Shown here piece by piece: positions 11,818 through 33,087 of a stretch of DNA of 64,000 bases; within the stretch, counting starts at the first letter, position 1; each line of letters begins with the position of its first letter. The stretch comes from Laetmonice hystrix (Eukaryota), in assembly GCA_965235115.1 (NCBI GenBank), contig OZ249436.1:30876001-30940000 (forward strand), in the 5' to 3' direction. A model generated the notes under the pieces. It saw nothing but the letters and a program-made list of their open reading frames with translations. It did no database searches and was not told where the DNA came from. The translations under genes and the position numbers were made by a program.

Positions 11818-12158
11818 ATGATGTACGGGAATGCAGCAGAGCCAGAGGCCACCGGGCAACAACCGTCGCCGCCGCCGCCGCCCGAGAGTAGGCTCCGTAG
11901 GAGACGTGGGTCGTCGTGTAGTTTGGCGCCGCTGGACATTGACGCGGCTCGGCGACACTCGATAGACCTCGGCCAGGAGTGCATTAACCTCTTCCTAGCA
12001 TCCTCCGACAATGATGTAGCAGACAGTGAGCATGGTGACCACGGTCCCTCAATACGAGAGGTTCAGGAGGAAGGACAAACGCTGTTTGCAGATTTTCTAA
12101 AAGAGCAGATAGCAAGTGAGGGGCTGCAAGAGCCTCCGGTATTAACACCGTTAAGCAG
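11818..12158 (+). CDS. BCL-2-family apoptosis regulator, first coding exon
   Basis: MMYGNAAEPEATGQQPSPPPPPESRLRRRRGSSCSLAPLDIDAARRHSIDLGQECINLFLASSDNDVADSEHGDHGPSIREVQEEGQTLFADFLKEQIASEGLQEPPVLTPLS. Ends at consensus donor AG|gtgagt (phase 2) and joins the BH3 exon in frame. The last segment resembles helix alpha1 of BAK/BAX-type proteins. The start codon is inferred; the acceptor ctacag at 11772 precedes it. Confidence 0.75.
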
Positions 12159-13348
12159 GTGAGTTGGCGTCTAAAACTTTAATTCAGTTTCATTATTAGA
12201 ATTCATGGCTATGCTTGGGATTTCAGTGTGGCCTTTCCGAGCTAAATCCACAGGAATTAGCTTTGACATGATCATAATCCACTGTGTCCGTAAATGGCAA
12301 TTCAGCATCCAAGCACAAGGTTCTATGCACTGCTGGTCAACTTTAGAGATACATTACAGAAAATATCCATACCCACACAAACGAGAAAAGTATCAGTCAA
12401 AGTTTTATTTTGGAAAAGGTGGCAGATTGTTGGTTCTTCAGCCACAACTCAGAGAAGAAGGGAACTTAACATGTATGGATGTATAACATTACCAGACATT
12501 TGAAAAGATTTGGATTTTCATTATTTCGACCAGTTTAGATTAGAAAAGGAACTATTGCTCAGTACAGAGCTACCAGCAGATCAATATGTCATGACCAAGA
12601 CAATCACAAACATGATGGAGCCCTATGATTAAAACTTTAGTTTTACTGTGGGGTTGGTTCAGTGACATGTAATGACCGTGTCTTTAAGCCAGCCCCTGCA
12701 TGAAGGAGAGAGAACTGAATACTGCCCCACAACCATAGAAATGCCAGGAACAGGCATTGGTTCAGGGAATGTAAACTTGTAATGCTTGGTTCTTAGATCA
12801 GCACAACTTAGAAGGTTCTAGTCTGGTGGATAATAGATATAGCAATACACACAACTGTATAACACCAAGAAGCCAATGTCTGTCTGCTATAAATGCTCAG
12901 ATTATGTAATCAGAAAGATGTGAGACAAAATATATATTGGTGTAGTGGAATTTGCTTTAATCCCGCATCATCACCGCAGGTGCAAACAAAATAGAAATGG
13001 CTGTACCAGTTGAGGGGATCTCGACATATAAAACTCTGATATGTAAAATTCTCTTATAATTATGTATACTCAGAAAGAGGGGAAATGCGTTTAAGTGTCT
13101 CTGGCATACCATACTGATGAGTGTACTAATCAGTAAATATCTAATTACAAAATACACATCTTTAGATATTTTACTGTTTTACATATAGATTGCAAATCCC
13201 AGTCTTTCAATAGATTTACTTGATGAGGATTATATCAAATTCATCAAGGTTGTGCACATCAGTAAGGTAGTTTGGGAGAATGCATACACACATGGGGCGT
13301 GAAGATAGTACATGTATTTCAAGACTGACAGCAACTCCATCCTGTCGA

Positions 13349-13368
13349 GAGCATGTCCAGACATGCTC
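13349..13368. promoter_or_regulatory. p53/p63/p73-family response element
   Basis: GAGCATGTCC-AGACATGCTC is two RRRCWWGYYY half-sites, 20/20 match, zero spacer, both with CATG cores. It lies about 1.2 kb into the intron after the first coding exon of the BH3 gene. Confidence 0.8.
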
Positions 13369-15689
13369 ACATGTATAACCATGCACTTCCCAGTTCCAGG
13401 CTTCAATGTTAAATTATTCTGGTGGTAACCATCTCTAGGTCACTAAAAAGTCTCATATATCAGAGTCAGGTTGTTACTGGTGGGAAAGTGTGACTTAGTA
13501 TTGCACCCTCAGTGCCTCTTTCTCTTCAGTTTCTCAATTATTTAATTATAAAATCTATGTGTTGATCTTCTTGAATTTTTATATTAGCAAAAGTTATGCT
13601 AAAAATGGCGATGATCAAATCGACAATTCATAATGTATGAAGCCTTCCCAAATTTTTATTTCTCAAATTCTCAAGGTGTAATGGTAAATATATGATTTTC
13701 AACCATGAATATGAAACTCGAGTAAACGTAGTTTGTCAATATATTTTACAGCTATTTTAGGGCGTTATCATCCGTTATCTTGAGTTAAAATGTAGCACAA
13801 GTCCGACACCTATCATACTCATAGGTCGGTTGTGTATCAAGTGTTAACTGTGCCATATGATATCCTCCAGAGTCCAGTCTTACACCTAGCCGTGATGATC
13901 TCACTGTTTGGTCAGAGGGAGAGAGTGACAACCATAGCCTGCCTTATCTACTCAGGGCCTAAGTGTGGTCCAAAGTAAAAGACCCAATGTTTGTTTTCCT
14001 ATGAGATAGGACATGTTCAGGAGACGTAAACCCAATTAAGTTCTGGCATTTGTGCCAGCCATTGCCAAGAGTTTGGCTGGTAAACTGTTGTTGCTGACCT
14101 GGAAGCTGTCTTTAAACACAGACATTTAAGAACATAAGTCCCTTTTCAGATCTAGTATAAGAGATGCACTGTTAGAGAATTTTGAAAGCTGTTACTTTAA
14201 ATGAAAGTAAAGATGTGAGTTAAAATAAAAGACAGGCATGCATGTTAGTACCATCTTCTAAAACATAATCATTATCCTAAATCTAGTTTACAGAGTGGAA
14301 GATCGTAAATATTAACGGTCATTACCACCATAGTAGCTGACACCATAATGTGGAAATCCCATAAATCTATTTTTATTGACCAGGCTCAGAGTTCAAAAAC
14401 TAGATTGGTTTATATCCAACAACCACCATTATCTTAGAATATGATCTTACAGTAGATGCAGTTCATTTCTGGAACAGATCCTTATTCGGACGAATAGGAA
14501 GGGGGGGATGGCAAGGATTCTTAAATTTTGCACTGCGGGAAGAAGTGAACTATAGCCTCTGCATGCTAAGTGCAGCAATCACATGATTACCGTATTACAT
14601 GGGGAGACCGAGAAGATTCTACTTTCTGTCAATTTATATTTCAATCACAGTAGTAAAGTCACCAGTGGCAATGTGATTGCAATATGTTAACGATTGGTCA
14701 ATTCTTAATATTAGATCCTCTCCGTGTTCTTTCCGAGAATTTCCGACCTGGAATATTGAGTCGAGTTGTTAAAAGATCAACCGAGGCCAGCCACTCAAGG
14801 CGCCTGACCCAAAGAAGTCACCGGTAGTGTATAACACCAGAACTTCACCCGTACGCTGTTAGCACTTGGCTCTTGACGTTACCCGGTACACAAATCTGGG
14901 TAAACTTCACACTCAGTTCACTCCATTCGGCAGTCAGATGGCACGTTCTGGTAGATGGATTAACGAATTGAATACATGTTGTAAACATAACGATTAGTTT
15001 AATCCTTTAGTTATGTACCGTTGTATTATAGTGGCGGTAAGTTCTGGTACTCGGAGTTAAGGAGTCCAGAAATAGAACATTAGGACAGTTTGTGTTCCAC
15101 ATCTTTATCTGATGTTATAAAAAATGGATGTGATAGCAAAACAAAGATAGTTGACGTTTTTATAACGGCGTAATGGAATTAATATTTCCAGGGTAGAAGC
15201 CATGGAACAAAGAATTCATAATAATAATTGTAAAGTAGCTTCAATTTTCTCGTTTTTTATTCAATGAAAGAAAAAACCTAATAGTTTTGAAGTGATTCCC
15301 TCATCATTTTGGGAGTTTGACAGTCCCAATAATCGGCAAGTTAGGCTTGGCTTCTTCTTGTCGTTAACGTGTCAATTTTTAAACTGATCCAAATAAAGCT
15401 GCTGTGTCGGAAGTCATCAAAAATGATTCATCAGACTCCAGACAGTTGCGGTATCTTTGGATCATTGGTGCCGTGTCTGTCTGCTTGCCTGTCTGATTCT
15501 TGGCGCCAAGTCGAGCATGGCGAAGGTCAGAGAGTTGGCACTCTCCACGCAAAAGGCCAGCAGACTCTCCAGAGAACCCTTGCCTTAACAACCCCCAAGT
15601 CTGGCGGGCTCGGAGTGCAAGTGTTTGGCACCAGTCCCACCTGCCCCGCCACACACCGAGTGACACCTGTAACAACAGAGGGCGCTGCT

Positions 15690-15900
15690 GATGAGGAGCG
15701 CGCCCGTCGCCGCCGCTGACGCCGGGCCACGGGACGAGTCAGTGGACCGGGCCGCGACCCCGGCCTCCCGGGATCCCGGCCCCTCGGCCCCGGGATCCCG
15801 GCCCCTCGGCCCCGGGATCACGGCGGCTCGCCCGAGAGCAGGCAGCGGGGGCCGAGTACCGGGTAACTCGCGGTCATGCTTCGCTGGACCAATTCAGGTG
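15690..15900. repeat. CpG-rich island with a 22-bp tandem repeat built on the palindrome CCGGGATCCCGG
   Basis: Very GC-rich stretch in AT-rich intron. Unit ccgggatcccggcccctcggcc repeated about 2.4 times near 15768-15822. Confidence 0.7.
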
Positions 15901-16804
15901 TAGCCTGATTGATGGAACTGTTGCGGGAAGATGACTCAGTTGAGTTTAATAATAATAAAAATTAGCTTTCCTCCGGAGATACTTGCAGCCTTCCGTTAGG
16001 CCTAAATTGACAACTTATTGTCATAATATTAAACTCATATCTTGCCATAAGGCCTTAATGACACTTTAGATAGCGGATCAGAACTTGTAACTAATTACAT
16101 GGAGACGACTTGCATGACAACTGTTGCCATGCCCCGACACGTGTGAGAATGGACAACCCCCTTTCACTCCCGATCCCTGATATTGCCACAGCTGTGAGGT
16201 TTAACCCTCACATATACACAATGCTATTTGACCGTATCCATGAGGGACACTAATTACTCGGTGCCAATTAGCCAGTGCCAGTTTGCTGAGCGTGTGCAGG
16301 CAGCTGTAACACTAGACTCCCGGCTTGAGACAATACCATGCTCATCCGGTCTCTCTGCTGGAACCTTTCCAATCCCTAATCTACGGGTTATTATCAGATC
16401 AATTAAGAGGTCTTGACTGAGTTCATCAATGCCGTAGGAGGGCGGGGGTTCAGGTTGTTTTGTTACTGTCAAACAGTGGAACATCTACAATATATAAAAT
16501 GGTTGTATAGAGGTGGATTCAAGTGTGTGAAATATTTACCCCTGCCCCTTTACTGTTAATTAGGAGTTGACCGACGACTTGAGTGGGCTGTAAATATGCG
16601 GTTCGTTACATGGGGTAAGGTGTTCGGGTTAAGTTTAGGGTCGTAGATACAGTACACTGGCTTAGACCGCGGTGTCTCACCTTAGAATCGGTGACACCCG
16701 GAACAAAAGGGCGTGGCTGGTTAATCACTCGACGCAGATGGTCAGTACCCTAGGCCCGTGTCTCTGCCAGCCCCCCCCCTCCCGCACTATTGTTCCTTTG
16801 TTGG

Positions 16805-16821
16805 TGGCCGCCAGGGGGCTC
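16805..16821 (+). promoter_or_regulatory. CTCF-like motif inside a Sox/TCF-site cluster
   Basis: tggccgccagggggctc is near-consensus CTCF. Flanked by AACAAAAGG (twice), CTATTGTT, CCTTTGTT and CTATTGTG within about 16700-16915. Confidence 0.55.
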
Positions 16822-17720
16822 TCCCTGTGTGTCCTGGTGGCTGACAAGACTCGATGGCTGGCACTATTGTGTTGTGTTCTCATCACTCTCAAAGGGTCTC
16901 CTAACAAAAGGTCGCCTATTGGGAAGCAATGCAGTGAAAAGGTCAATTATTGCATGTTGGTCTGCGTGGGTGAGGTGCTGGGGTTGGTCAAGTTGGCGGT
17001 GTATGGAGTGCCGACGAGACAGTTAATCAGTGTTCCTAGAAGTGATGAGGTGCGGAACATTTCTGTCTTAGATGATTTTGCGGTGCTTTCTTCTCTGAGC
17101 AATGCAATTTGATTTAGTTGGATAGATCAACAGATCATTTGCTATTTGTTCTCACCCAATTTATCTTAAAATTAAAATAAAAAATATTGTACAATGGCTA
17201 TGAATGGATTGGATTAGATAAATTATCTGTTACCTATAGTTCCAGGTGAACACAGAAGTATCTCTTACAAAAGCATCTTCACACAATTTATAACCTTATG
17301 GCATTCCATAGAAACGTGGGTCAGTTCCTCCAGCAACATCAAGGTTAATTGCCGTGAAGGTGTTGGAGAGTATTTACATTGTACATGATATGTTGTGATA
17401 GGAAATGAGACCCAGATTACAATCGCATATATTGCCTGGCACATGCAGACCGGACTAGATTTGCCACTTTCTCTGCAGCCTGCCGTTGGTGTTGATGAAC
17501 AGTTAATACAAATGTATATTTGCGGCGAACCATTTGGTCTCGCTTTGGTATGCGCAATTGATTGTCAGTTAGTAGTTTGCCTTGCTTTATTAAAGATTAA
17601 AACAACGTTTGAATTTTAAATCACTATTGCATTATCTGAATGAGTAGTTTCAATGAGTGATTAACCTTGCAGATTCGTCCCATGTATTGATCTTTTCTTG
17701 TAATTTGTATGTTTTCATAG

Positions 17721-17838
17721 TTCACTGAATCAATACAAAAATCCATTATGGGCCAAGGCGGGACGGGAGCTCCGAGAAATGGCAGACGAATTCTCCAGAA
17801 CACACAAACGCCGCCAGATACAACATAGAGCACAATCT
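17721..17838 (+). CDS. BCL-2-family apoptosis regulator, BH3-encoding exon
   Basis: Acceptor gttttcatag| and donor |gtaagt, 118 nt, phase 2 in (matching the upstream exon) and phase 0 out. Translates SSLNQYKNPLWAKAGRELREMADEFSRTHKRRQIQHRAQS, containing the BH3 pattern L-x-x-x-(G/A/S)-D-E-F. Confidence 0.88.
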
Positions 17839-20800
17839 GTAAGTTACTTTTTATTATACCCCTCTGTGGTGTATTCTTTGCTTGTTTCTTTTGTAGCCTT
17901 AGCAGATTCCTCCGTTCGACAGCTTCATTCAGAGGTCGCTTTTTTTGCATGGCTACTTGTTGCAACAGTAGAATGAAACACGGTAGAGCTCGGTCAGGTG
18001 GCGGAAAGTTAGCTTTAAGGAGGGAATAGGAATGTGTGTCTTCATTAGTAGCTGGGCTACAAATATAGGTATTGATATTGGTAGGTATTCATCTGCTAAC
18101 ATTTTCTGTCTTGTTTAAAACTGTTATAAAGGTGATTAAAAATTATAGCCTTCAATTGATTGAGCCGTATAATATGGCACATTCTCCAGAAAATGTGTAC
18201 CGTAGACGGTGGGCTTCTATAGATTAACTTCTGTCTTAGAGTCGGTGGCACAAAAGAAGGATGCAAGGTTCTTATCATGTATTAGTATATAATTTAACTT
18301 GCCCATTGTTGTATTCGATTACTTTATCATTCATAACAACTAAGATACATCATACCCTAAATAAATCTAAAAATAACCAGTGATAATAAACAAGAAAATG
18401 GACATTTATAACTAAAAATGGTCATTGTCGGTTTAGGCATATTCAGCCGTGTTCTTTCATTAGTCACAATTCAAGTTTGATATCAGCACAAAGAGTGCAT
18501 TATGCATATATAATAGTCCCGCATGGTGCACATCTATACGGTCAAACCGCAAGTAGAATCTATCCATATTAATGTCCCAATTAATGCCTTAAACATAATT
18601 GTTTGTTATATGATCTCAGCAAGTAGTCAACATAAAGTAAGCCCGAGTAGTTTATTCCGCGGTATGTTGTCCGACAGATCGCACAACATTTGTATACAGA
18701 ATGGGACGTGGGAAGTGTTGTGCTAGGAAGATCAACCCTCTATCAGGAGTGCTGGTGTGGTAGATCTCTATGTCTTCTCGGGGCCGACTTTGTTTATTAT
18801 CGTTTCCAACCAAGCATCCCTGTCTCACTACCTTGGCTGGCACCCTGTTGAGAGGAGTTTGGGTTTGGACCTTCTTAACTTTCCTCCACTGTCCAGGCCC
18901 TGGGAATACCGCGGCCATCGGGGCCCTTATCGTGGCTTAAACGGCAGCGACCGGCCGCCAGATCGGCTGCCGAGAGGGCGGGGGGCGTTAATAAGGGCTG
19001 CCTCTAAAGTTCCTCGGCGATGCTCATGTCAGCATTTCAGCTGTCTGGATGGCCAGAATATGGATGGCCTGGGCTGAGTCATCCACCCGGACAGACAGGC
19101 TGAAGGGATCGTGAAGAGACGAGGCCGAGTTTTTCTACACCAGGGTGCCAAGGAGGGTCTAAATACCTTGGGGCACGGTGACCCCAGAGCCATGACACTG
19201 CTTATACTTGGAGAGGCTGATAAGTTGGAGTTAGCCACTATCATCACGGGGCTACTCTTCACTGTATAAAGAATGGCAGTGATGCCTGGGCACGGGGGAC
19301 GTTGTGTAAACTATAGTTCTTTGTCTGGATATATGCTGAGGACAGTTGTTATAGGTTTGAACATTGATGAATTATTTTGTACGGAAGCTGTTAAAAATTA
19401 TGTAAATTGATACATCACAGAAATAAACATATTGCCCGACGAGGAAGAAAGGAAGACAGGATGTCGTCAAGGACCACTAAAGACATCTCATGTGTGTAGA
19501 ACTTAGTTAAGAATACACAGATGATGAAACCCAGATTTATCCGCGTTTTTACTTCTATCAAGGCTTTATTTTTGAATGTAAAAACGTTACATAAGTTTAG
19601 GCTTTTACAGCTCTAGGATTGGCATTGACAAAAACAAGGTTTAGTTGACGTGTTTTAATTTAAGGCCATTGGATGTTGTTGTATCGCTATCTAAAGACGC
19701 TTAGTATCAATCAATGACCCTGAAAGGACGTGCAAGACACAAGGAAAACTAAGTGTCAAACATTGAAGCACCAAAAGTTAAAAACAACGAACTTTGCAAA
19801 AATGTACAACGGGACACGTTGCAGTGGGTCGATGAAGTAGAGAGGGTTTTCGAGTAGGGGAGGGGGCAGGGGGTGTTCACCCAGGGTTTGTGAGGGGGCA
19901 GTCCAGGGTGTAGACCTGGCTGTATCCAGTAACCCTCTACCATGTTTTAACATGGTGTAGTCCACTCTCTAGTGCTGACGGACCCTGGACCGGACCCTCG
20001 ACAGACAGATGGCCAGGGTTAGAACGATAAAGTCACGGTGGGGAAGTCTCACTTCGGGATTGCAGATGGTAGACACGGTGTCTTATCTGGAGGATTTAAA
20101 GTGTGTGACCAATTAGCTCTTCAACAAGACCGTTTACTTCTTGCTAAATGAAAAAGGCCGTTTCTAACAAATATTTTTATAAAGTTGTAAACAGTGAAAT
20201 GGTTATATGTATACCGTACGTTAATTTGGGAGCGTTCGATTCTTGACGATAATTTAGTGTTCAGGTAACATCTGGTTGAAATAATCACTTGTAAAACGCA
20301 TGCACCACCAACACATGGCAAGTATCGCCGAGTAAACAGATTGTGTGTTTGGTGGGTACGTTGCCTTCCTCATTCATTTTAGATCCCGCAGAGTTTACTG
20401 GCGCTAAACAGTGGCTTGAAAGGCTATGTGCAATAGTTATATAATGCTTGGACCAGCATTCAACAATATTGAGGCCACCTTTATTGTTGACGGCCAAGCA
20501 ATAAGGCCGATTGACCAACTTTAACTAAGCTTTCGTAACAGGTTATCCGTGCATATATATAGAGCAATCGATTTTCCTTCCTGGGGTTCGGTTGTAAATC
20601 TGAATGTTAAAAGATATATTAGATAGCCCAGAATTAAGTGTTTGTTAAAACCTATGGCACAATATCGTGGTATTATGCTACGTACTAACAAAGCCAAAGG
20701 AGCAAACCAGGAAACGTGGAATGCTGTTGCTGGACTTTAGCCCAGTTTGAACTCTTGGACCCTTATCAAAGGTAAAACCGTAGCGAGATCTGAACGGATC

Positions 20801-21558
20801 GGATGCCTTTGAAGGTTTGGTGCCATTCATCATGTGATCGTCAAGAACTGCCCCCATTACTCTAGTGATTTGTATGCTTGTCAATGCCCCTAAGGCAGTT
20901 TCCAAGGTTAGACAAAGAATCTAACTTCCCTCTTCGGGCTGTGATTACATGGTTATCGCCAACCAAACGGCTTCAGGTTTCACACAGGTAACATATGAGA
21001 AGTTTATCGGAGCAGAGCCAAGACTTGCATAGTTACGTACGGAAACGTCATCGGTGAATTCACGTCCCTCCTCAACCAATATTGGCAATCGCTGTCATTC
21101 CATAATAACGTCACGCACATTTAAAGAAGCGAGTGAAAAAAGCGACCCCAAGGTGGTGTTATTTTGAAATATGACGCCGCCGAATGAGACGGGCGGCAGG
21201 TGTTGAGTGCCGTCCTTCTCCGATAAAGTTAGATGAGATCCATTCTTTGGGGGGATGGAGAAATATTGATGGCAATTATTGGGAGGGGGGTCAAGTAGCA
21301 GGTTTGTGGCTGGGGGCTGACTTGCTGTGTCATGGAAGGCCGGTTGTTGTGGTTCACAACATCATGGCCCGCCACTGTTGTGGAGTGCTGGTCATACGTC
21401 ACTGTCGCCACCGAGGATGAAAAAGTAAATAGCCCCTGGATGGGCGGTGACGGAGAGTCTGCGCTTGGCAACACGGTTCGGCTTCAGACGGACGCGCATC
21501 GAGCGCCACCACGAGCTCAGAGCGTTTGCATGCTGCATGTGTATAGTCCTGCCTGTAT

Positions 21559-21574
21559 CTGACCCCTAGTGGCC
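21559..21574 (-). promoter_or_regulatory. CTCF-like motif (reverse orientation)
   Basis: Minus strand GGCCACTAGGGGTCAG, one mismatch from CCACTAGGGGGCAG. Confidence 0.5.
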
Positions 21575-23043
21575 TCTTTTTAGTTTGTAGCTAAGTGCTG
21601 CCAGGACTTAGGCTAGAACCGGGGGTGTCGGTACTAAAGCCAGTGTTTTGATTTGTTTGAAATCCACTGGGACTGCTCTGCCAGTGGCGGGAATGGTGAT
21701 TCAGGGAATATAAGTAGGATGGCTGGTTAATGGTTCATTAAGAAAGGGGGGATACATGTCATAACCTTCTCTGTATTAAAAAAGGGCTTCCAATCGTAAT
21801 CCATATAAGGTTTCGGGTTGGGTCTTTAGCATCCATATGGATACTTCCTTGTTGGTTCCCAGCCTTGTATACGCGTAGAGAAAACTGGCACTGGTTTCAG
21901 CGGAATAACATTGATGTTGTAGATACTGCATGGTTAAATAGAAAATGTATCCAGAATGTTTATTGCCGCCATGAGTCCAGCTTCTTTGAAGAATTACACG
22001 CAGGGGGAAAAAACTACATGGGAGATTGTCTTCATGAATGTCAGTTCTCAATCAAAAGTTTCGCTGTTTTCAGTATGCGCTCCGAGAATGGTTTCTTCAC
22101 AAACGGAAAAATGAACTTTGCCATTTCTTCAAAGCATGGACTCTTTTTTTTAATGTGTCTGTTTGACAAATGATTGAAAAACAAAATGGTTACCTTCTTA
22201 AATAATGAACCTGCATCGGTTCCCTCATTTGTTTGAAAACAGTGCAGATTTGCGTGTTTTCAGGTGGATACCTTGACAGTGTGCCAGCACAGATGATTAA
22301 ACTCGTGGTTTTCTCCCACATGTAGAGAACAGAAACTTTCCAAACTTAGTGCAAGCAATTTTTCACGCTTTCTCCAGAAACCAATCTCATGTTTTTTATA
22401 CTTTTTTTTGCTTAATATGGTATTAAATTATAAGCTTTCACTTCATAGTGGAATAAGAATCGCATGTCATTGTTAGTCGTGAACACTTTTTACCTATTGC
22501 AAATACTTACCGAACAACCCGGTTTTTTTTCTCAAACTTTGCAAATGACAAATCTATTTGTGATGGTCGCATTGAATAGTAATCAGTTTGATTCGAAAGA
22601 ATGGTGAGGTTTCTTTTACTTAAAGATGATCTATATGACAAGTTTCATGAATCACGGTTTGATCCACCATTAGATTTGAACGTAAACATGTATGTATATA
22701 GATATTCTTTGTGACGCAGTACGCGCTCATGAAGTTCCCAAGTTTTCCTGTTGGCAAAGTGTCAAAGTTATATCTGATATCTTGGATTTCCTGGTGGCTG
22801 TGGTCATGGCATGTAATATCTGTATAGAGCCTTTGTTAGATGTCTTCCTCTTCTCAGAAAAACTCGGCGCAACTGAATGTTTATTGACCCATGTTCTGGT
22901 TCACCATGCATGCCGTGCCGTCTGGCCGCGTGTCAGTTTACTCTTAAAACCATGAAGTATAATAGTGCGGTGATTCACAGGCAGAAGTTTCTAGGAGGAA
23001 AGGCCCAGTTAGTGCCACTTATAGAAGTGATGTGGTTCGGCAA

Positions 23044-23183
23044 AGGGCGGATCCAGGATTATGTCAGAATGGGGGGCACCCGAACACAAACATGTTTTAG
23101 AATGCATCTTTGGGTCCTCTACACAAGCAAAAAAAGCTGAAGAGGAGCGCGCCCCCTGCCCCCCCCCCCCTGGATCGGCCACT
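23044..23183. mobile_element. Short TIR element (MITE-like, GGCGGATCCAGG type)
   Basis: Termini agggcggatccagg ... cctggatcggccact (about 12/15 inverted match) with an internal G-run and C-run. Confidence 0.55.
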
Positions 23184-24837
23184 TCATGAGAAATTCATCC
23201 GAGTCTCATGTTGAAACAAAGGCATGCTGCCATAGGAAACCAGCCCAGTATGTTTGTGCCTGCTCCACCTTACATAGAGTCGGGGGTTTCTCTCGGACAG
23301 CGTCGTCTCACTCGCTTATCTCTGAACGAGGTATAGAATGTCTTGAAGATTGAAGCAGATGATGAGAAAACTGTCACTGGCGGCCGTAGAGAGACGAGTT
23401 GATGGCACTTTGTTGGTAGTGCGTGTGCCAGCTCGGCGGGGAAGAGGCGGGATACCTGAGCAGGTTTCTGAAAGCCCTAGGTGGTCGCCAACTGAATATG
23501 TCCAGATGCGGCACACCAGATGTTATCTTCCACTGACAATTCGATGAGATCCACACTGAAACGTCGACCTTCCCAGCAGGAATATTGAAGGGAAGTCTAG
23601 AATATCATCCATTGATGAATCCAACCGTATGGGGGGGTCTTCTTCTAATTCTGAATATGGCAAAGGAATTCATAGGGACCATGTCCAATGGATGATCCTG
23701 GAGGGAGTTTTACATGCAATGTTGGGTTTACCTTTTCCTTTACCTTATATTATCTACAGAAATGTTTTGGTATGCATGGTTTCACATCAGCGAGTTCCAC
23801 TGCAAGCGATGAAGGTGATTAATCGTATAATCAACCCTGTCAGTGCCACATTAGCAGTATTTGCCCGGAGGGTTTGGCCGCTGTCAGGAGGCTATCATCA
23901 TCCAGGTAGATCACAGGGTTCCTCCAGCACGTAATCCTCCAGCTGACTCCTGTATGTCCGTGCCGAGCCGTTTTCCTTTGGGAGCAGACGAATACCTGAG
24001 CAGGAGTTCGGGCAAGGTCCAGCAGATGGCGTTGATTTATGCCCCGGTGGGGTGAGGGCCACGAGCCGTGTTGGACTGATAAAGCCCTGGCCGGGCCGGA
24101 GAGGCCTGCCGCCCGGCGCCTGACAGCCTCACCCCCACCCCCACCCCGGCCGTGTTACAGGACAAGGCCCTACGACCTGCCAGTGGTCAGCGACGGACCA
24201 TGGCAAACTGCTCAAGTCACAAAGAACATACTAAGGCAATGTATACTCTTCAGTGCCAGATCTGGACTCGGCATACTTATTGGATAGATAAATACCCCGC
24301 CAGGGGCACTCAAACCTACCCCCTCCCCCCTCCAACCCCACACCGATACTACAGCAGCAGATCACTGGACGGGACAAAGATGTTATTCATAGCCAAGAAT
24401 CTGTCAGGTAGTTATGCCACAGATAACGCCAACCTACGACGCAGAATGCTACCGAAAGAGCGGTGATGACTTATAATCATGTATGTTTTTTAACTTCAAC
24501 TAATGTGTAACATGTTGTCGATGATCATTTTTTCACGCTGATTATTGGTTACTAGTACTCCTTGTGTGGGCATGCAATACACATGTTTGGGTGGTTATAG
24601 TAGCACATGTTACGTTATAGCTTTTTAAAGAGATCCCGTATTTATCAGTACTCATAAGACAGACACAGTTGTTGGCAATTTGTTAGGATCTTGTGTGACA
24701 GTTTGAAGATGGTAAACAACAGAAACATAACTTTGTGAAGATTCTTTTCGCTGGATTTTTGGTTTTCCATCAAGCGCAATTATGTGTCACACATGCTCAC
24801 CATAGCACATGCAGGTTAGATATGTGGATGTCGCAGT

Positions 24838-27144
24838 CACGTGATGCACGTGAATGTCCGTCACAGCCGTATTGCTCTTGGTACCCCCTTCAGTAGAATC
24901 GTTACGTAAGGACAAAATTGACAGGACTATGAAACAAAAATAAAAGTTTTCCACGTGAAGACTGTAAACGTTAAATTCAATTAATATGTACCAAAGCGTC
25001 TGATAAGATAAGAAATAAAAAAAAGGACAATTAGCGTGCGATTTGCATCGTATTCGCCTCCTTTGTCTTGTACATCCGAGCATCCACAGATGAGCCCTAA
25101 AGCGGAATATCCATCGTGAAATAAAGTATGTGAACAACGACCTTTCCCCCTGTGTCTCCACAGATCTACAACGATAAATTTTGAAAGATGACATGTTAAT
25201 GAAAAGGATCATAATGGTCTCCCTCTTTAAGAAAACAATTTTAATTCCCTGCTGTAACCCGGACGGCTGATTCAACAGTTAATTGTAGTGTTTAACTGAT
25301 TGCCGGGAGAACAAGGCCGAGCAGAGTTTACAACTTCAGCAGGTCTGGTGCCAGATGGGAACAAAGGCTGTTACAGACGGCCTAGGGCTTATGTAAGGTA
25401 GGTGGAATGTATACAGGGTCTGGGTTAACTTGGGACAGTCTGGGCTCGGGCTGGGTGATGGGCCCGATGTTTGGGTGTTGGGGGGAGGGGGGGGGTGTCT
25501 GGAGCCAGATAAGGGGGGAAGTTTGATAAATTAACTGTTGACAGCTGACAGAATGAAATCACCCTATGGTTCTAATGGTCGCAGAGAGACGAGCGGGCAC
25601 GCTCAGGGGGACTGTGTGAGAAACTTTCAATCTGGATCTTCTGGATGTGTGCTATCTTTTAACTATTTTCTCCTCGGTTTGGACCCGGTAATTTTCGTTG
25701 AGAGGGGTTTCCTGTATTACCCGATCATGTGTGCGGTGGTCCTTGTATCATTCTGCATTGGTTTCCTGCTAACATATTTGCCACTATATATACAGCTGAC
25801 TGAGAAATAAAAATTGTGACGCTGAATGTGAGATGACTAATATTGTTGAAGAAAGGGTCCTATAACATATTTATTTATATGAGTTCATAGTTATAAGAAT
25901 AACTTTTGATGATTTTACTGACCCATAGAAAACGGCAATGAAGATGATCTGACAGATCAGATATAAGCGGGAATATGAACGAAACCAATGATCCAAGGTT
26001 AAAATGAACTGTCGCGCCAAACTTTGATCAGTTGGACATCTTAGAAAACTTATTTTAAAATTATATTCCATATAGATGTCCCACCTATTTCTCTGCCCAA
26101 CAATCAGATGGGCCAGACTAGAAATCTTATTATTTGACACACTGCCCAACGAAAACAACTTTAACAATCCTAGAACAAGTCAATATTTGTGGACTTGTGG
26201 TAATATATATCCAAGTTCATGAGTCACACTTAGTTGTGACACATGCCGGAAGGCAAGCGTCTGTGTATGTGTTGGGAGGGGGTTATTAGGTGCCTAAACC
26301 CTTTACAAGTACATGTATAGTGTAGGCAAAGGGAACAATTTTGTAACATGAATTATGATGACTGTATATGTATTACTCTTTTGACTGTACCTTGGCCCCT
26401 TTCCAAGTATATATCTTGACCCTGGATGGGTCCGCCCTATGCGTATTTCATTTTTTATTAGTCACATATACTTGGTGTTCTAGGAGTGCATGGGACAATT
26501 TGGCTCGTAGACAAAGTGGGCGTGGCACGTGCCTGGAAAAAGCGGCCATCATATGTCAGCGGGTGAGGGGTGGGGCGGGGAACGGGGTAACAGGGGTTGG
26601 GGTGACCCAGAGCAGAAGTCTGGGTTTCTCATCATGCTAACTACCTATCCCTACCCCTTGACCACAGCTGGAATATGGTAAGGTATTGACCCTCAGATCA
26701 TTGGGCACAAATCTTGGGTCAGGTTTCACAGCAGAAATTCGACCTTTCCATGCAGACACCTCTACCTACAGAACTTCAGCTGTATGGCGACAAAAAAATT
26801 TAAGTACAAAAAAAAAGTTTGCCTTAGGATCCGAATGGTATTTGTCTGAAGCGTCAATTGAAATAATATTATGATTAGGGCAAGCAGGTGTCCCGCGGCG
26901 GTGTCGGGTGTAATCACAACCACGTGCAGGAGTAGGGGTGCGAGTATATGGGGCCAGGAGAAAGTGGGGTGCTTGGAGGGTTGATGGGGACAATGGAGCG
27001 TGAAGAGTAAGAAGGGGCGCGAATATCATCTGCGTCATTGCCATCCAACCAGTAGTGCTTGTTTACCCAGCACTCCATGGTAGATAGTGACTTACTGGTC
27101 GTGGTTGAGGCACACGTGCAAAGTATGACATCACTGGACACGTG
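24838..27144. promoter_or_regulatory. Cluster of seven canonical E-boxes (CACGTG) and a PAR-bZIP D-box
   Basis: CACGTG at 24838, 24847, 24952, 26526, 26921, 27113 and 27139. TTACGTAA at 24902-24909. Confidence 0.55.
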
Positions 27145-27299
27145 TCCCGAGTGTGCCAGGGTTATAGCAGTCTCGAGTTGCACCTAGAAGGAGAGAAATC
27201 ATGCGTTGACCGTCGTGCACTAATGGTGCAGTGTGCACCACCAACTTATGTGGTGCACGCCCGCATCCCGTTGAGGCGGTGCTGGGATGTTGGGCGGCG

Positions 27300-27791
27300 T
27301 GATGTGCGGTTAATAGCTCAGACAATAGGATGCGGGAGCATTACGGGACGAGCCTAGGCATGTCGACTGGAGGACGCGCGCGAGGGACGCATGTCGCTCT
27401 GTTTACAGGCCGTCGTGACCTGATTACGTCATCACCGCGGGTCGGGCAGTTATCCTGGATGTTACGGACTCAAGGGTCAGTGCCATGAAATTCACGCTGC
27501 GCAGTTCTCAATCTATCTCCCGACAGACGTACGAATCGGGACACTCATCGCTGTCTTTGTTCAGGAACACCCGACGTTTTTGTCGACCTTTGGGAAAATA
27601 AGTATCATGCAGTGATACCCAATAAAAGAAAAGTGCCTTCTTATATTTCCGTTACTTTTTTTTCACTTAAATAATAACTCTCCCCATGTCTGTGCTTTTT
27701 GAGGGAACTTCCCTTTCCCATTTTGAATTCGTCGGCGTAATATGAATCCATTCTGAAATTCCGAAGAGAGTTTTCAAAGTGAAAGGTAATA
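27300..27791 (+). promoter_or_regulatory. Orphan CpG-rich promoter-like segment with candidate non-coding first exon
   Basis: CpG-dense stretch (cgcgcgcg, ccgcggg), TGTTTAC, TTACGTCA (27424-27431), Inr-like TCAGT (27477-27481), and donor AAG|gtaata at 27786. Confidence 0.4.
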
Positions 27792-29471
27792 TTTTTTCAC
27801 ATAGAAAAATCTGGGAAGTTGCTGAGGGTTGACAAGAATGTGGAGGTTGATATTAGCTAAGATATGTTAATATGAGGCCATCTAAAACTAACATGCTTTG
27901 TTCACTTCCTATATAAAAAAACTAACAAAAACTTCCACCTCGACAGTAGTCTCACCGCAAATCTGAGACAGCATTGGAATAAATAAATAGAGGCCCAAGA
28001 ACGATTTGGATTCGGGCCAGTCGTAGCTGAGCGAATTGTTGCCTGTAGCTGTGTGTATAGGTGATTTAAAAAAACATACGTAACCTGTCAGCAGATCTTT
28101 TCACGGGAATAAAAAGAAATCCTTTTAAAAAAAGGAACGAAGAAGGAAATTTCCAGGACCGTTGGCCCGTCGACAGGCGCACACTTAGCGAAGGTTGAGG
28201 TTGTGTAACCTGAGAAAGGATAGACACCTCAGAGTGTGGCGATATGCCATAGATCGTGGCGCCCCTGGTAGCGAACTCGTCATACACCATGAACCATCAA
28301 AATCTGGGCGTGATTCAGCAACAATCCGCTGTACATGAGGCAGGACTCCTAAAAAATATACAATAAAAGATATCCCCCCCCTTCCCCAACCTAGACACGG
28401 TGTAATACGGTATATAATGGTAAAGTGTTGTTAACTATATGCGGAGTAGTAGTTGAGGGAACAGAAGGATTTTTTGAAAGGGTCATAACAAAGACAAGAT
28501 AGAACCTGTCGTTTCATGTGCAGCTGTTGCAGGGTGTTTTCCATCTAAATTTTTAAATAGTTGTATGTATAGATCTTAGACTTTTTTTTCACAGATAGGC
28601 ATTTTAACTCCAGCACGTACATGGTTGATGACATGGCTATGTTTCATTCGCCAAGTCTTGGGCCTATATACATTCTGATTGACAGATGCAAACTGAGCCA
28701 CCTGCTGCTGAACTAGTCAGATGGTGTAAGCGCCACACGATTCGGGGCTGGGTGGCATGATGTTACAAACTGGCAGTAGCAATGTTGTTGTGGTTTTTTT
28801 TTTGTTTTTTTTTTTGGTTTTTTTTTTTGGGGGGGGGGTTAGCTCCTCTGTCCTCTATATTCGTAGATTCGGTTGTTTCCAAGGCACAGTTTCAAGTATT
28901 TTCCTCACTGTCACATGAGGACTACGGTATAGTGGGTTGGTTGCTCGAGGGCTGCTCTTCAAAAAGGGTGTCCCTGCCATGAATGTCAATTCATAACTGG
29001 ATTTCTACGGACTAACTTAGACGTGTACACTTGTACATGGTCCAGAACATATGAAAACCTATAAAAGAGTAAATGGAGCCTAGGAACTACTGTAGAATTA
29101 ACCTTTTGGTATGCTTACTTGGTACTTGGACTCGTTGCTTGTTAGTACTGATATAGTGGTGTTAGTGGTGTTTACCCATATTATTGGGAACTGCGTAGAA
29201 ATGCTGTGCACAGTGTGTTTGTCGTCCACTCACTAATTTCCTAGGGTTTGCATGGCCACTTCCCGACGCTGTTGTAGGTTGTAGTAGATTGTTGTGTCAT
29301 TTCTCGTGTTCTTGTGTGATATTCAACTAAAGGTGTGATGGGTTCGGGAATCTTAAGAATATTGACGCAAAATTTCAGGCATTCATTGACACTAGCGTCA
29401 TTTTAATATGAAGTTTTAAAATTAGTATGATGGAATGGGAAATTTTGTATCATTAAGAAAGTGCTGAGAGT

Positions 29472-29500
29472 CTGCCTGCCTGCCTGTCTGCCTGCCTGCC
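29472..29500. repeat. (CTGC)n microsatellite
   Basis: ctgcctgcctgcctgtctgcctgcctgcc. Confidence 0.85.
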
Positions 29501-29622
29501 ATGAAAATAAAAACTTTTTTTTAGTTACTGGGGTACGTAATGTTAATGCCTTTGATTACCGTAAAAGTAAATCAGAAACTTATAGCCCGTGATAAAGACG
29601 CCAAAAGTAATTACTAGTCCTG

Positions 29623-29729
29623 GGGTGCGTTTCACAACCTGTCGTTAGCTTGTCTTATCGTTAACACCAATGTATTTTCAATGGGGATGGTAACGCACGA
29701 CAGGATAACGATGGTTGTGAAACGCACCC
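29623..29729. mobile_element. Palindromic MITE, PIF/Harbinger-like, with CTG target-site duplication
   Basis: Perfect 17-bp TIR GGGTGCGTTTCACAACC ... GGTTGTGAAACGCACCC with further imperfect pairing inside. Flanked on both sides by CTG (29620-29622 and 29730-29732). Confidence 0.8.
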
Positions 29730-32700
29730 CTGATTCTATATACTCCTGTTAATATTGACGTTACGTACCTCTTTTTTTATTCCAGTTTTCGATTTATCTC
29801 TTTTTGCGTGGCTGGCTGGAGTCGATGCCATTCCTGTATTGGATGGTAAAGTTACCAGTAGGCGAGGGTGTCGGTGGACATGGCGACGGTGACGGCCAAA
29901 ACACGTCGGCAGACGGATGCGCGACGTTACAACCTAGGCTTTTTACTGACGTCAATAACAATATGTTGTAAGGCACTGCAGGAACGCGTGCTGATATCTT
30001 CATCTATAGATGGGTCTATGGTCCATGCTTCTGCAATGACAGTGTTAGGGTTGGTCCAGTATTTAACAAGGATGAGAGAGGGCTCAATGAAAATCCTCTG
30101 GTGTCATCCCTATTGTAATGACAAGGAGTCATGTCCTACTTATACTTCAGCTGACACTTTTGATGCCAAATTCGCTGAGCTGTTCAATTTTGCTTGAAGA
30201 ATGACGAGGTCATTGTGCGACACAGATGTACATATACTTACATATATACTTTAATGCTGGTCTGCCGTGGATAATCAATTTTCATGTTTTCATCTTCATC
30301 ATTAAATGCATGACATGTCTGTTTCAGTTCAGAACTTTAATTTGTTCTTATAGACCATAAATTAACCATTAACAACATTTCATAATTTCCGTGTGTAATT
30401 TGTGATTTTTTCCAAGGACCGGTATGTAATTGTTGCCATGCACGGAGTAACACCTTTTGCTAAAGGGTTAGATATTTTTATTTTCACACGTAGCTAAGAT
30501 CATACAGGTCTGGCATATTAGCCTTTAGTCAATGTACGATCAGTTTAGGGTAAGCACTCCAAAAGCTGACAAAATATCGATGCCCGCACACTCTAGCTTT
30601 GGCACACTTCAATATTTGAAGTATTTATTACTGGACAGATTGATAACACGAAACTTACCTTTGTGAGATGTGCCCTAGTGTCTCAAACGGTAGAGAGGAG
30701 GAAGAAGATGACAGAAAGTTCACTAGTCATGAGGGCAACCACGATGTATGGTGTTTGCAGAAGTGCATTTTGAATATATATAGGTAGAGTAATTTGTTAA
30801 CTGCTGGGTCAATTCATGTAAGAAATAAAAGCACAAATTAATATTGAGATGATGTCAGTAGAGTAGATCTGTATAGGATATGGGTACGAGGTTGATAAGG
30901 CTTACTGCTTTAGATCTATTTGCATCACTTATAGAAATGTGTTTGATATCAGCACCGAACAATAACAGCATTTTGTTCCTTGTAGAAAATATTTTTCTTT
31001 TTTCAATGAATCCAAAGAAGTAGAACATAAGTACATGTCTTGTTTTGTAATTACACATGTAGTCTTCTTGCTTGTTTTGCTGCATTCTTTGGTGTGGCCA
31101 TTGTAAAAACGGTGAACAATGGATGTCTGGTCATCTTTGACGAGGAGGTTTACTTTTCCTCGTCATTCACGTTGTCGAGTGGTCTGGATCTCATGATATC
31201 TTGTTTGCTACAGGTGATAATACTTAGCTTTACTGGCAGATTGATCAGCAGGACCTGTTATCAGTTCGATCAAACTTGTCTCTATCTCAGTCAATGCCGG
31301 AGGTAGAAACAGTCGAGTAACAACTGCCATTATAAATACAGTTATTGTGACTGAAAGATTTGTGTCATGTAAATTGATAATCACAGAGAGGGTAGATGTG
31401 AACCCAGAGCTGGGTGACAAGACATTTGCTCATGACGTAATGGGATGCCCTTCCTGAGAGCCTAGGGCTATCATGTTAAGGCGCATTCCGTCTCATTGAG
31501 TGTCATTTCCCGTGCTCCCCTGAAGATGTGCAGAAACCCCTGTATATAAGTGTTCAATAGTAGTATTACAGTTACTTATTTCATTTTGATTGATTAGATT
31601 TTAGGCTTTGGTAATCATAACGTGTCTACATGATCTAGTTTGTTTTTTGGTGGTTTAGCATTTAAGACGTTGTTTATTTTTGTGTGTACCATAAGTAGAG
31701 TGTATTGAACTGGTCACAGTTGAAAGTGTTCAGATTTATCTACGTGAGTTTTTTTGACTTGTGCCAGAATTGTGTTCCCCGTCATAGAGTGGTGGGGTAC
31801 AAGTAGTTGACCCGGACAACGACTGAGATGTTTTTGAGAGGATTTTTTTTTACCTGGATGAGATTTGGAAGGCAAAGCTGTGACAATCGATTCAGTTTTA
31901 TACTGGATTAAGAAATATGTGACATTGTTTTCGCTGTAACTAAGTGAAACCAATGTATTCTGTTAATGAGAGCTCAGTGCTATATCTGCCACATTCTGTC
32001 ACCGGTTGGAGGTCAGTTATGGAATGGGCAGTCTCATCAGTAGGTTAGGATAACAGTAAAGAAAGTCCGTGTAGTCCTTTAAAGGGACCTACTAAGACGG
32101 AAATCAAAGATTTGATATGATGAAAAAAGAAAGAGCACAATCAGTAAAAAGAGGAAGTGATGGCATATTTTATTATCCTGCCAGTGGTTTGCTTTTTTCA
32201 TTTTTATCTGAATTAATAATTTTGGTCGATTAATGCCATACATTGTGAAGAAACTGTTGTCTCAGTCATAACACCGTAATTATGACAACAGTGATATTTA
32301 GCCTATATAGGATCGTTTTGAAACAGTCTTTAACAAGTCAAATCACGGTTACACAATCGACGTGATTGACAAGTGTTCAGCTACAGTTTTGTAGTGAAAG
32401 TCCATGGAAGGATAAAAATCTATTTTTTCACTCTAGGAAGATGTGGTCTTTTAGACGGAAGATGTATATGGCAGTAGTACGCATGGTCAGTGCTGCACAA
32501 AATGCAAATGTTTATATTTGCGCGATCTGAGTGCCTTCCCTGTAAGGTTTTGTGCATGTTTTTTTATGCATTATCTGACCTGTCTGACTAATCTCAGTCG
32601 GTGCGCCCTTTTCAGGAGTTGTACTAGAATTATACATACCTATTCGTACTAGTAAAAAGCCAGTAGTCTCTATTCTTCATTTTTTATAAGGCTTACAATA

Positions 32701-33087
32701 ACCCTGGCCTCCTGCCTTACAGCAAAAATTTCAAAAAAGAACATAGATAAATCTTGAAGTTGAATACAATTGTTAATTTAATTTAATAAATCGTCCTTGA
32801 TTGAGTGTCCACATATTAACCAGTAATTGGCTCGCTCAACCCAAAAGTAATCAATCGGAAAATACTTGAGTGGTTCCATTACGTCCAAAAATGAAATTGT
32901 TGTTCTTATCACCGGTATTACAAATAAAAGCAATTCTGATTCTGAATGTAATGATGCAAGACATATCATATTCGATATACAAAGTTCCTTTGATGAGCAG
33001 GGCCCTTTTTATAGGATTTGTCAGTGTTTTGTACGATGATACTTAGGGGCTGTCCGAAAAGATGTGTCGCTATACCTATATAAAATG

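What the first reader, a model, noticed from the sequence alone, without database searches (positions are those of the whole stretch)
17839..18400. No BH1/BH2 exons found downstream; read-through gives a BH3-only protein with a hydrophobic tail
Seen: I scanned acceptors and BH1/BH2-like words (NWGR, TRERI, GGW) over 17.9-64 kb by eye and found no in-frame candidate. Ignoring the 17839 donor extends the frame 45 aa (VSYFLLYPSVVYSLLVSFVALADSSVRQLHSEVAFFAWLLVATVE-stop at 17976), with AATAAA near 18385, giving a ~198-aa protein. Inference: either a >46-kb intron spanning other promoters, or a truncated or alternatively polyadenylated BH3-only isoform with a membrane anchor. Caveat: T-rich introns often translate as hydrophobic by chance.
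Basis: partly seen in the sequence, partly recalled or inferred. Interest (0 to 1): 0.7.

Follow-up and report, generated by a model that had tools for sequence, protein, structure and literature searches.

The report
Intron start of a BAX-like gene
The flagged stretch is the start of an unusually long (58.7 kb) intron in an ordinary BAX-like cell-death gene; the BH1/BH2 and membrane-anchor exons lie 12.5 kb past the window's end, so the "BH3-only protein with a hydrophobic tail" is most likely translated intron.

Summary
There is no BH1/BH2 exon between 17.9 and 64 kb. Reading through the 17838|17839 donor gives 45 aa with a stop at 17974-17976. AATAAA sits at 18385.

The headline reading does not hold. 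A Pfam Bcl-2 scan of the whole genome found a same-strand BH1-BH2 exon at C1:30952531-30952758, which is window-equivalent 76531-76758. A tail-anchor exon follows 183 nt later. Splicing 17838 to that exon is in frame (phase 0 to phase 0).

A profile built from 18 homologues hits the 94 kb around the locus at four collinear places only: exon 1, the BH3 exon, the BH1-BH2 exon and the anchor exon. The joined 261-aa model scores 263.6 bits end to end. The read-through tail scores -2.2 bits.

Five mollusc and nemertean orthologues have the same four exons and the same phase-0 intron after the BH3 exon. Their read-through tails are 7-70 aa and unrelated in sequence. The family profile's best solved match is BAX (E 8.7e-23).

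No RNA run exists for this organism, so a minor truncated isoform is untested. This is an ordinary gene, and interest is low.

The parts
11818..12158 (+). Coding exon 1 (ATG at 11818; 341 nt; donor CAG|GTGAGT). It encodes the N-terminal extension with the RRRRGSSCSLAPL motif and helix 1 (EEGQTLFADFL).
   Evidence: Family HMM hit at 11875-12135, HMM positions 11-83, E 6.6e-8. Aligns with the RR.S..L..L and EEG..LF..F blocks of 18 homologues. Sequence read.
12159..17720 (+). Intron 1 (5,562 nt). It contains the perfect p53-type site at 13349-13368.
   Evidence: Exon 1 supplies two bases (AG) and exon 2 one base (T) of a split Ser codon, so the join is in frame. The p53 pattern occurs once in the window against 0.01 expected.
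17721..17838 (+). Coding exon 2, the BH3 exon (118 nt). It encodes ..YKNPLWAKAGRELREMADEFSRTHKRRQIQHRAQS and ends in phase 0.
   Evidence: Family HMM hit with E 8.8e-16, HMM positions 91-133. Mean identity to homologues is 45%. It is the only copy in the genome. It aligns to the BAX BH3 helix in the profile-to-PDB alignment.
17839..17976 (+). The finding itself: a 45-codon open frame plus TGA obtained by reading through the GTAAGT donor. Interpreted here as translated intron, not coding sequence.
   Evidence: The tail scores -2.2 bits against the family HMM. The stretch has 42% T. Chance estimates are 8.4% for length and 2.7-6.3% for hydrophobicity. Orthologue read-throughs are 70, 23, 19, 9 and 7 aa with unrelated sequences.
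18385..18390 (+). No evidence that it is used.
   Evidence: Present. Background is one AATAAA per about 1.6 kb on this strand. No RNA data exist.
17839..64000 (+). In-window part of intron 2. The intron continues to window-equivalent 76530 (58,692 nt in all). Exon 3 (BH1-BH2, ends ..DHGGW|GTGCGT) is at L003:2531-2758 = C1:30952531-30952758 = window-equivalent 76531-76758. Exon 4 (tail anchor plus TAA) is at L003:2942-3040 = window-equivalent 76942-77040.
   Evidence: Pfam Bcl-2 hit in the genome scan. Exon 3 scores 52 bits against a cut-off of 31.4. Acceptors tttcag|ATT and ttccag|GCT were read directly. HMM hits are E 3.7e-36 for exon 3 and 0.02 for exon 4. The 94-kb stretch contains no N. 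Intron content: four tandem arrays, no Pfam domain, no Rfam family.

Best explanation
Positions 17839-18400 are the first few hundred bases of intron 2 of a four-exon, BAX-like, multi-BH-motif gene.

The pre-mRNA is spliced from the strong donor at 17838|17839 (TCT|GTAAGT, phase 0) across 58,692 nt. The acceptor is tttcag|ATT at C1:30952530|531, which is 12.5 kb past the window's end. The exon there encodes helices 4-8: a degenerate BH1 (ITAER in place of NWGR) and BH2 ending in GGW. After a 183-nt intron at the position classic for the Bcl-2 family, right after GGW, a last exon encodes a tail anchor, ALMLATIAISVYCIY followed by RWIR.

The product is a 261-aa protein in which the BH3 exon forms helix 2 of a globular Bcl-2 fold. 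The 45-aa hydrophobic 'tail' is what a T-rich intron start yields when translated.

Shown here: the exons, their phases, their collinearity with the family, the conserved intron positions, and the BAX affinity. Inferred: that this junction is the one actually used in this animal, and that the protein permeabilises mitochondria as BAX does.
For: (1) A whole-genome Pfam PF00452 scan finds a same-strand hit at C1:30952519-30952758 covering only profile positions 21-100, so it lacks its BH3 part.

(2) That exon starts in phase 0 after tttcag and ends GGW|GT. Exon 2 ends in phase 0. Joined, exons 1-4 give an open 261-aa frame.

(3) Exon 3 has 240 homologues. Every full-length one inspected carries Y.NP.WAKAGRELR.MAD.F..T.ER..V...A directly before the BH1-BH2 part, with EEG..LF..F and RR.S..L..L further upstream. 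These match our exons 2 and 1.

(4) An HMM of 18 homologues, built without our sequence, hits the 94 kb at four collinear + strand places only. They tile HMM positions 11-239 of 241 with E 6.6e-8, 8.8e-16, 3.7e-36 and 0.02; the next hit is a 16-residue match at E 0.039.

(5) The joined model scores 263.6 bits (E 3e-82) as a single end-to-end domain. Exons 1-2 alone score 94.7 bits and the read-through tail scores -2.2 bits.

(6) All 17 residues invariant in the homologues, and 16 of 17 near-invariant ones, are kept across all four exons.

(7) Lottia, Tubulanus, Liolophura, Aplysia and Bradybaena orthologues have the same four exons and the same phase-0 intron after the BH3 exon.

(8) Two relatives' proteins are encoded as uninterrupted ORFs on short Logan contigs of 1.6 and 3.0 kb. 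These look like cDNA, so in relatives BH3 and BH1-BH2 appear to be joined in mRNA.

(9) The BH3 exon is unique in the genome. The family profile finds exons 1, 2 and 3 together only at this locus.

(10) The family profile's best solved match is BAX, E 8.7e-23, from helix 1 to the anchor. Exon 3 alone also matches BAX best, E 5e-10.
Against: There is no transcript evidence from this animal. The only public runs that hold the locus are DNA of one sample, and three word-indexed protein searches found no same-species or near-identical protein.

The 58.7-kb intron is 7 to 43 times longer than intron 2 in the five orthologues, which ranges from 1.4 to 8.1 kb. Very long introns are places where premature polyadenylation can occur.

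The read-through frame is longer and more hydrophobic than most mock read-throughs. The Tubulanus read-through also happens to contain a hydrophobic stretch.
Confidence: 0.9

Rival explanations
1. Dual output. The gene mainly makes the 261-aa BAX-like protein. In addition, intron retention or intronic polyadenylation near 18.4 kb yields a functional 198-aa BH3-only isoform with its own hydrophobic anchor.
For: The read-through frame stays open for 45 codons, which 8.4% of mock starts do. It is more hydrophobic than 97% of long mock frames. AATAAA is at 18385. A 58.7-kb intron gives time for premature cleavage. Short BH3-containing isoforms of multi-motif Bcl-2 genes are known in mammals (own knowledge, not tested here).
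Against: The donor is a full GTAAGT consensus. Tails in five orthologues are 7-70 aa with no shared sequence. The tail adds no family score. AATAAA occurs once per 1.6 kb by chance. The hydrophobicity follows from 42% T. There are no RNA data either way.
Confidence: 0.06
2. Two separate genes: an upstream BH3-only gene (exons 1-2, ending in the read-through or in an unseen last exon), and a downstream Bcl-2-family gene (exons 3-4) with its own undetected 5' exons.
For: The two halves are 58.7 kb apart. Pfam matches the BH3 exon only weakly, to BMF and BAD (E 0.018-0.12, below the cut-offs).
Against: No other N-terminal or BH3 exon for exons 3-4 exists in the 94 kb or elsewhere in the genome. 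The four pieces tile the family profile without gap or overlap, and their phases match. Every full-length homologue has both halves in one protein, and five orthologues have an intron at exactly this point.
Confidence: 0.03
3. The long gap is an assembly artefact (a mis-join or collapsed insertion), and the true intron is short.
For: Intron 2 is an outlier in length among orthologues. It holds several tandem arrays and a repeat at 18.4-19.0 kb that is covered 4-8 times deeper than its flanks.
Against: The 94-kb stretch has no N. All exons lie on one strand in the right order. Independent Logan contigs of the DNA runs cover 15.0-21.0 kb, with a single contig across 17216-18673 and no joint at the exon-intron border. 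Even if the gap were an artefact, the conclusion that 17839 onward is intron would stand.
Confidence: 0.02

Closest known systems
Lophotrochozoan 'apoptosis regulator BAX / BAX-like' proteins (Aplysia californica XP_005100743.1, Liolophura sinensis XP_064608718.1, Tubulanus polymorphus XP_074650102.1, Lottia gigantea XP_009062684.1; names as given by the sources)
   Same: Collinear over the whole length: the RR.S..L..L motif, the EEG..LF..F helix, the WAKAGRELR.MAD.F BH3, T(K/A)ER in place of NWGR, GGW, and the tail anchor. Identity is 45% in exon 2 and 50% in exon 3. The four exons and intron positions are the same.
   Different: Intron 2 is 58.7 kb here against 1.4-8.1 kb in the orthologues. 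Exons 1 and 4 are only 21-27% identical.
Vertebrate BAX (PDB 1f16, 5w63 and others)
   Same: It is the best solved match of the family profile, from helix 1 through BH3, BH1 and BH2 to the C-terminal anchor (E 8.7e-23 to 4e-19). It is also the best match of exon 3 alone. The intron sits right after GGW (that this position is conserved across the Bcl-2 family is own knowledge).
   Different: The BH1 signature NWGR is ITAER here, with only the R kept. There is an N-terminal extension of about 80 aa with a basophilic RRRRGSS motif that BAX lacks. Pore-forming activity is untested.
BH3-only proteins BAD, BMF, PUMA
   Same: The BH3 wording (GRELREMADEF followed by a basic stretch) resembles BAD and BMF enough for weak Pfam hits (E 0.018-0.12).
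   Different: Both hits are far below the curated cut-offs: 13-15 bits against 27-28. The gene goes on to BH1, BH2 and anchor exons, so it is not BH3-only.
Short BH3-containing splice isoforms of multi-motif Bcl-2 genes (for example N-Bak, Mcl-1S, Bcl-xS; own knowledge)
   Same: This is the kind of product the read-through would give: BH3 kept, BH1/BH2 lost.
   Different: Those isoforms are documented by transcripts. Here no transcript supports one, and the tail is not conserved.

Membership tests
Multi-motif Bcl-2 family (Pfam PF00452) | Bcl-2 domain match above Pfam's gathering score | tested here: met
   Exon 3 alone scores 52 bits (E 1.1e-13) against a cut-off of 31.4. The genome scan gives 52.6 bits.
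Multi-motif Bcl-2 family (Pfam PF00452) | BH2 with GGW, and an intron directly after the Trp codon | tested here: met
   The exon ends ..DHGGW|GTGCGT. The next exon starts 183 nt later after ttccag. The four other Bcl-2 loci of this genome that were read out show the same feature.
BAX-like effectors | BH3 motif L-x3-[GA]-D-[DE] on helix 2, in one polypeptide with BH1/BH2 | tested here: met
   LREMADE is in exon 2, which joins in frame to exon 3. It aligns to the BAX BH3 in the profile alignment. That the junction is used in this species is inferred, not observed.
BAX-like effectors | BH1 signature NWGR | tested here: not met
   ITAER stands at that place, and T(K/A/R)ER in the homologues; only the Arg is kept. 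This is a trait of the whole lophotrochozoan clade, not a defect of this gene.
BAX-like effectors | C-terminal tail anchor | tested here: met
   Exon 4 encodes AAVLSKTVQHVRTALMLATIAISVYCIYRWIR. Its best 17-residue hydropathy is 1.84 and it has basic flanks. It aligns with the homologues' anchors (HMM E 0.02).
BAX-like effectors | Closer to BAX than to other Bcl-2 family members | tested here: met
   For the family profile, BAX scores E 8.7e-23 and the next, Bcl-xL, 8e-16. For exon 3 alone, BAX scores 5e-10 and the next, Bfl-1, 5e-6. No tree was built.
BAX-like effectors | Permeabilises the mitochondrial outer membrane | not testable with these tools
   Needs an experiment.
BH3-only proteins (BAD / BMF) | Family profile match above the cut-off | tested here: not met
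   BMF scores 14.9 bits against 27. BAD scores 13.2-15.2 bits against 28.2.
BH3-only proteins (BAD / BMF) | No BH1/BH2 and no Bcl-2 fold in the gene product | tested here: not met
   BH1-BH2 and anchor exons lie downstream, in phase and collinear with the family.

The most novel reading that the evidence does not exclude
Besides the full-length BAX-like protein, the 58.7-kb intron allows regulated premature termination near 18.4 kb. This would give a 198-aa tail-anchored BH3-only isoform, so that one locus supplies both an effector and an activator of cell death in an annelid.
Probability: 0.05. Interest if true: 0.5.

Novelty: new member of a known kind. Interest (0 to 1): 0.15.

Why it matters
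The main value is as a correction. The locus should be annotated as one four-exon BAX-like gene spanning about 65 kb, not as a BH3-only gene.

BH3-only genes are hard to find in invertebrates and would have been notable. A BAX-like gene is expected, because a published survey reports BAX, BAK and BOK clades in annelids and molluscs (PMC11463336).

The case also shows how a fixed window can cut a gene in two: here the missing exons lay 12.5 kb past the window's edge.

One side effect is that the perfect p53-type site at 13349-13368 now sits in intron 1 of a BAX-like gene. This recalls the intronic p53 element of mammalian BAX (own knowledge) and slightly sharpens that separate finding.

Tried and rejected
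RNA evidence. The look-up of sequencing runs returned only three runs of one sample. When laid on 15000-20999 they behave as DNA: even depth of about 30-60 across exon and intron, a single contig across 17216-18673, and no joint at 17838. Expression, splicing and poly(A) use therefore could not be tested.

Word-indexed protein searches. Three searches all came back empty: exon 1 alone; exon 1 inside its 199-aa open frame, so that proteins of 110-348 aa qualified; and exon 3 inside its 112-aa frame. Because of the word and length limits these blanks say little. The exhaustive HMMER search with exon 3 found 240 relatives.

Pfam on the BH3 exon gave only sub-threshold BMF and BAD hits. The BH3-only family reading was rejected once the downstream exons were found.

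Genes inside the intron. The ten longest intronic ORFs have no Pfam domain, and there is no Rfam family in 84 kb. 'Other promoters' could be neither confirmed nor excluded.

A conserved read-through tail was considered after the Tubulanus read-through (70 aa) also showed a hydrophobic stretch. It was rejected because Liolophura, Aplysia, Bradybaena and Lottia give 23, 19, 7 and 9 aa and no sequence is shared.

One orthologue look-up, for Nucella (P0007), found no record.

No structure was predicted, because a spliced protein cannot be handed over by reference and the profile match to BAX was already decisive.

Full report
**What is at the coordinates**

The exon before the finding runs from 17721 to 17838. 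Its acceptor AG is at 17719-17720. It encodes ..YKNPLWAKAGRELREMADEFSRTHKRRQIQHRAQS and ends at a codon boundary in front of a full-consensus donor, TCT|GTAAGT.

Reading on through the donor gives 45 further residues (VSYFLL...VATVE) and a TGA at 17974-17976. AATAAA stands at 18385-18390.

Exon 1 (ATG at 11818, donor after 12158) joins this exon in frame through a split Ser codon, giving 153 aa.

**Is the tail more than chance?**

I started a mock read-through at each of the 3959 GT dinucleotides inside the same intron.
- 8.4% stay open for 45 codons or more.
- Of the long ones, 2.7% are as hydrophobic overall (GRAVY 1.2).
- 6.3% have as good a 19-residue window.

So the tail is somewhat unusual. 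But it was selected after the fact, and the first 138 nt of the intron are 42% T, which explains the F/L/V/S-rich translation. AATAAA occurs about once per 1.6 kb on this strand.

**Where the missing exons are**

The window is G000:C1:30876001-30940000. A scan of the whole genome with Pfam Bcl-2 (PF00452) gave 13 matches. One is on the same contig and strand at C1:30952519-30952758, 12.5 kb past the window's end. It covers profile positions 21-100 only, so it is a Bcl-2 domain that lacks its first, BH3-bearing part.

I fetched 30 kb downstream and found the following.
- **Exon 3.** It starts after tttcag at L003:2531 in phase 0. It encodes IDISNVTQEKFRQLLAELFPRAYITAERIM...NWVRDHGGW and ends GGW|GTGCGT at L003:2758. 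It scores 52 bits against Pfam Bcl-2, where the cut-off is 31.4.
- **Exon 4.** It begins 183 nt further on, after ttccag. It encodes AAVLSKTVQHVRTALMLATIAISVYCIYRWIR followed by a stop, which is a typical tail anchor.
- **The join.** Exon 2 ends in phase 0 and exon 3 starts in phase 0, so the four exons give an open 261-aa frame.
- **The intron.** Intron 2 is 58,692 nt. The 94 kb examined contains no N.

**Do the two halves belong together?**

An exhaustive HMMER search with exon 3 found 240 relatives. Every full-length one that I read has three blocks upstream of the BH1-BH2 part:
- directly before it, Y.NP.WAKAGRELR.MAD.F..T.ER..V...A, which corresponds to our exon 2;
- further upstream, an EEG..LF..F helix, which corresponds to our exon 1;
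- an RR.S..L..L motif, also corresponding to our exon 1.

I built an HMM from 18 of these homologues, leaving our sequence out, and ran it against all 4983 six-frame open segments of the 94 kb. It hits four places, all on the + strand and in order:

| Piece | HMM positions | E-value |
|---|---|---|
| Exon 1 | 11-83 | 6.6e-8 |
| Exon 2 | 91-133 | 8.8e-16 |
| Exon 3 | 130-208 | 3.7e-36 |
| Exon 4 | 209-239 | 0.02 |

The next best hit is a 16-residue match at E 0.039.

Further checks point the same way.
- The joined model matches the profile end to end as one domain, at 263.6 bits (E 3e-82). Exons 1-2 alone score 94.7 bits, and the read-through tail alone scores -2.2 bits.
- All 17 residues invariant in the homologues are kept, and they are spread over exons 1-4. 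So are 16 of the 17 near-invariant ones. This argues against a decayed or split gene.
- The BH3 exon has no second copy in the genome.
- The family profile finds exons 1, 2 and 3 together only at this locus.

**Gene structure in relatives**

I mapped five orthologues onto their genomic loci: Lottia, Tubulanus, Liolophura, Aplysia and Bradybaena. All have four coding exons with introns at the same places. Each has a phase-0 intron right after the BH3 exon, with a GTA donor, and an intron right after GGW.

Intron 2 lengths and read-through tails compare as follows:

| Species | Intron 2 | Read-through after the donor |
|---|---|---|
| This genome | 58.7 kb | 45 aa |
| Tubulanus | 5.8 kb | 70 aa |
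| Liolophura | 8.1 kb | 23 aa |
| Aplysia | 1.4 kb | 19 aa |
| Lottia | 1.9 kb | 9 aa |
| Bradybaena | 1.95 kb | 7 aa |

The tails share no sequence.

Two further relatives (P0010, P0022) are encoded as uninterrupted ORFs on Logan contigs of 3.0 and 1.6 kb. Since every genomic orthologue has three introns, these contigs look like assembled cDNA. That would mean the BH3 and BH1-BH2 parts are joined in mRNA in those species. This is an inference, because the run type was not checked.

**What the gene is**

The family profile's best solved match is BAX, aligned from helix 1 through BH3, BH1 and BH2 to the anchor (E 8.7e-23 to 4e-19). Bcl-xL follows at about 1e-15. Exon 3 alone also matches BAX best, at 5e-10, with Bfl-1 next at 5e-6.

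NCBI names the Aplysia, Liolophura and Tubulanus members 'apoptosis regulator BAX' or 'BAX-like'. A published survey reports BAX, BAK and BOK clades in annelids, molluscs and brachiopods (PMC11463336).

The clade differs from vertebrate BAX in two ways. It has T(K/A)ER where BAX has NWGR in BH1. It also has a long N-terminal extension carrying a basophilic RR.S motif.

The weak BMF and BAD Pfam hits of the BH3 exon are far below the cut-offs. They reflect only the wording of the BH3 motif.

**What could not be tested**

No RNA run of this organism is available. The three runs that hold the locus come from one sample and behave as DNA: even depth over exon and intron, one contig across 17216-18673, and no joint at 17838. 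Three word-indexed protein searches found no same-species or near-identical protein.

So the use of the 17838 to C1:30952531 junction in this animal is inferred from homology, reading phase and conserved gene structure. It has not been observed. A minor intron-retained or prematurely polyadenylated transcript cannot be excluded.

The intron holds four tandem arrays and a repeat at 18.4-19.0 kb. It has no Pfam domain in its ten longest ORFs and no Rfam family. I found no sign of nested genes, but small-exon genes would escape these checks.

**Verdict**

The finding's stretch is the start of a very long intron of a BAX-like gene.
- Its first alternative, a >46-kb intron, is correct.
- Its headline, a BH3-only protein with a hydrophobic tail, is not supported.

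Confidence in the four-exon model is about 0.9. This is an ordinary gene with an unusually long intron, and interest is low.

Noticed in passing
window 13349-13368: The perfect p53-type site GAGCATGTCCAGACATGCTC occurs once in the window, against 0.01 expected. It now lies in intron 1 of a BAX-like gene rather than a BH3-only gene. Mammalian BAX also has an intronic p53 element (own knowledge).
   Followed up: partly
window 18400-19000: DNA contig depth rises from about 50 to 160-385, roughly 4-8 times, in all three runs. There is a 119-nt skip (18524-18644) in two of them. This looks like a dispersed repeat just downstream of the AATAAA at 18385.
   Followed up: no
window 39611-39696, 45601-46078, 53564-53972, 55305-56522: Four tandem arrays lie inside intron 2, with periods of 31, 33, 37 and 41 nt. 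The largest has 29.7 copies at 97% identity.
   Followed up: no
L002:9549 to L003:1459 (window-equivalent 73549-75459), - strand: A 1.9-kb stretch is open in several frames and translates as a Pro/Ser-rich repeat (..PSPISTPVS..PPQSVPRSV..). It is probably a minisatellite and sits 1 kb upstream of exon 3.
   Followed up: no
window 4278-6074, - strand: An uninterrupted 598-aa ORF has a C-terminal part that reads like a prolyl 4-hydroxylase alpha subunit. This is my reading of the translation; no search was run.
   Followed up: no
L005:4538-4660 (Lottia gigantea gene model P0002): The deposited model leaves exon 2 at GAG|GTGAGA. The frame, however, continues with the family-typical VRQRAQE up to a GTAACA donor. 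The Lottia protein therefore probably lacks 7 residues through a mis-called donor.
   Followed up: partly
protein P0001 (273 aa, best hit of exon 3): It carries the BH1-BH2 part twice in tandem, nearly identical. This is probably a tandem exon duplication or a prediction artefact in its unnamed source.
   Followed up: no
homologue alignment: The whole lophotrochozoan BAX-like clade shares three traits: an N-terminal RR.S..L..L motif, T(K/A/R)ER in place of the BH1 NWGR, and an FFFCSD core. The first looks like a conserved basophilic kinase site.
   Followed up: partly
G000: C12:18.24 Mb, C1:4.82 Mb, C10:5.53 Mb, C11:24.32 Mb and others: About ten further Bcl-2-family loci are present. The four that were read out have canonical BH1 motifs (KWGR, NWGR, TWGK, NWSR) and a GGW|GT exon end.
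   Followed up: partly
window 17328-18162: No haplotype differences appear in the three DNA runs over 835 nt around exon 2 and the read-through frame. The flanks show about one difference per 50-150 nt. This may be chance.
   Followed up: no
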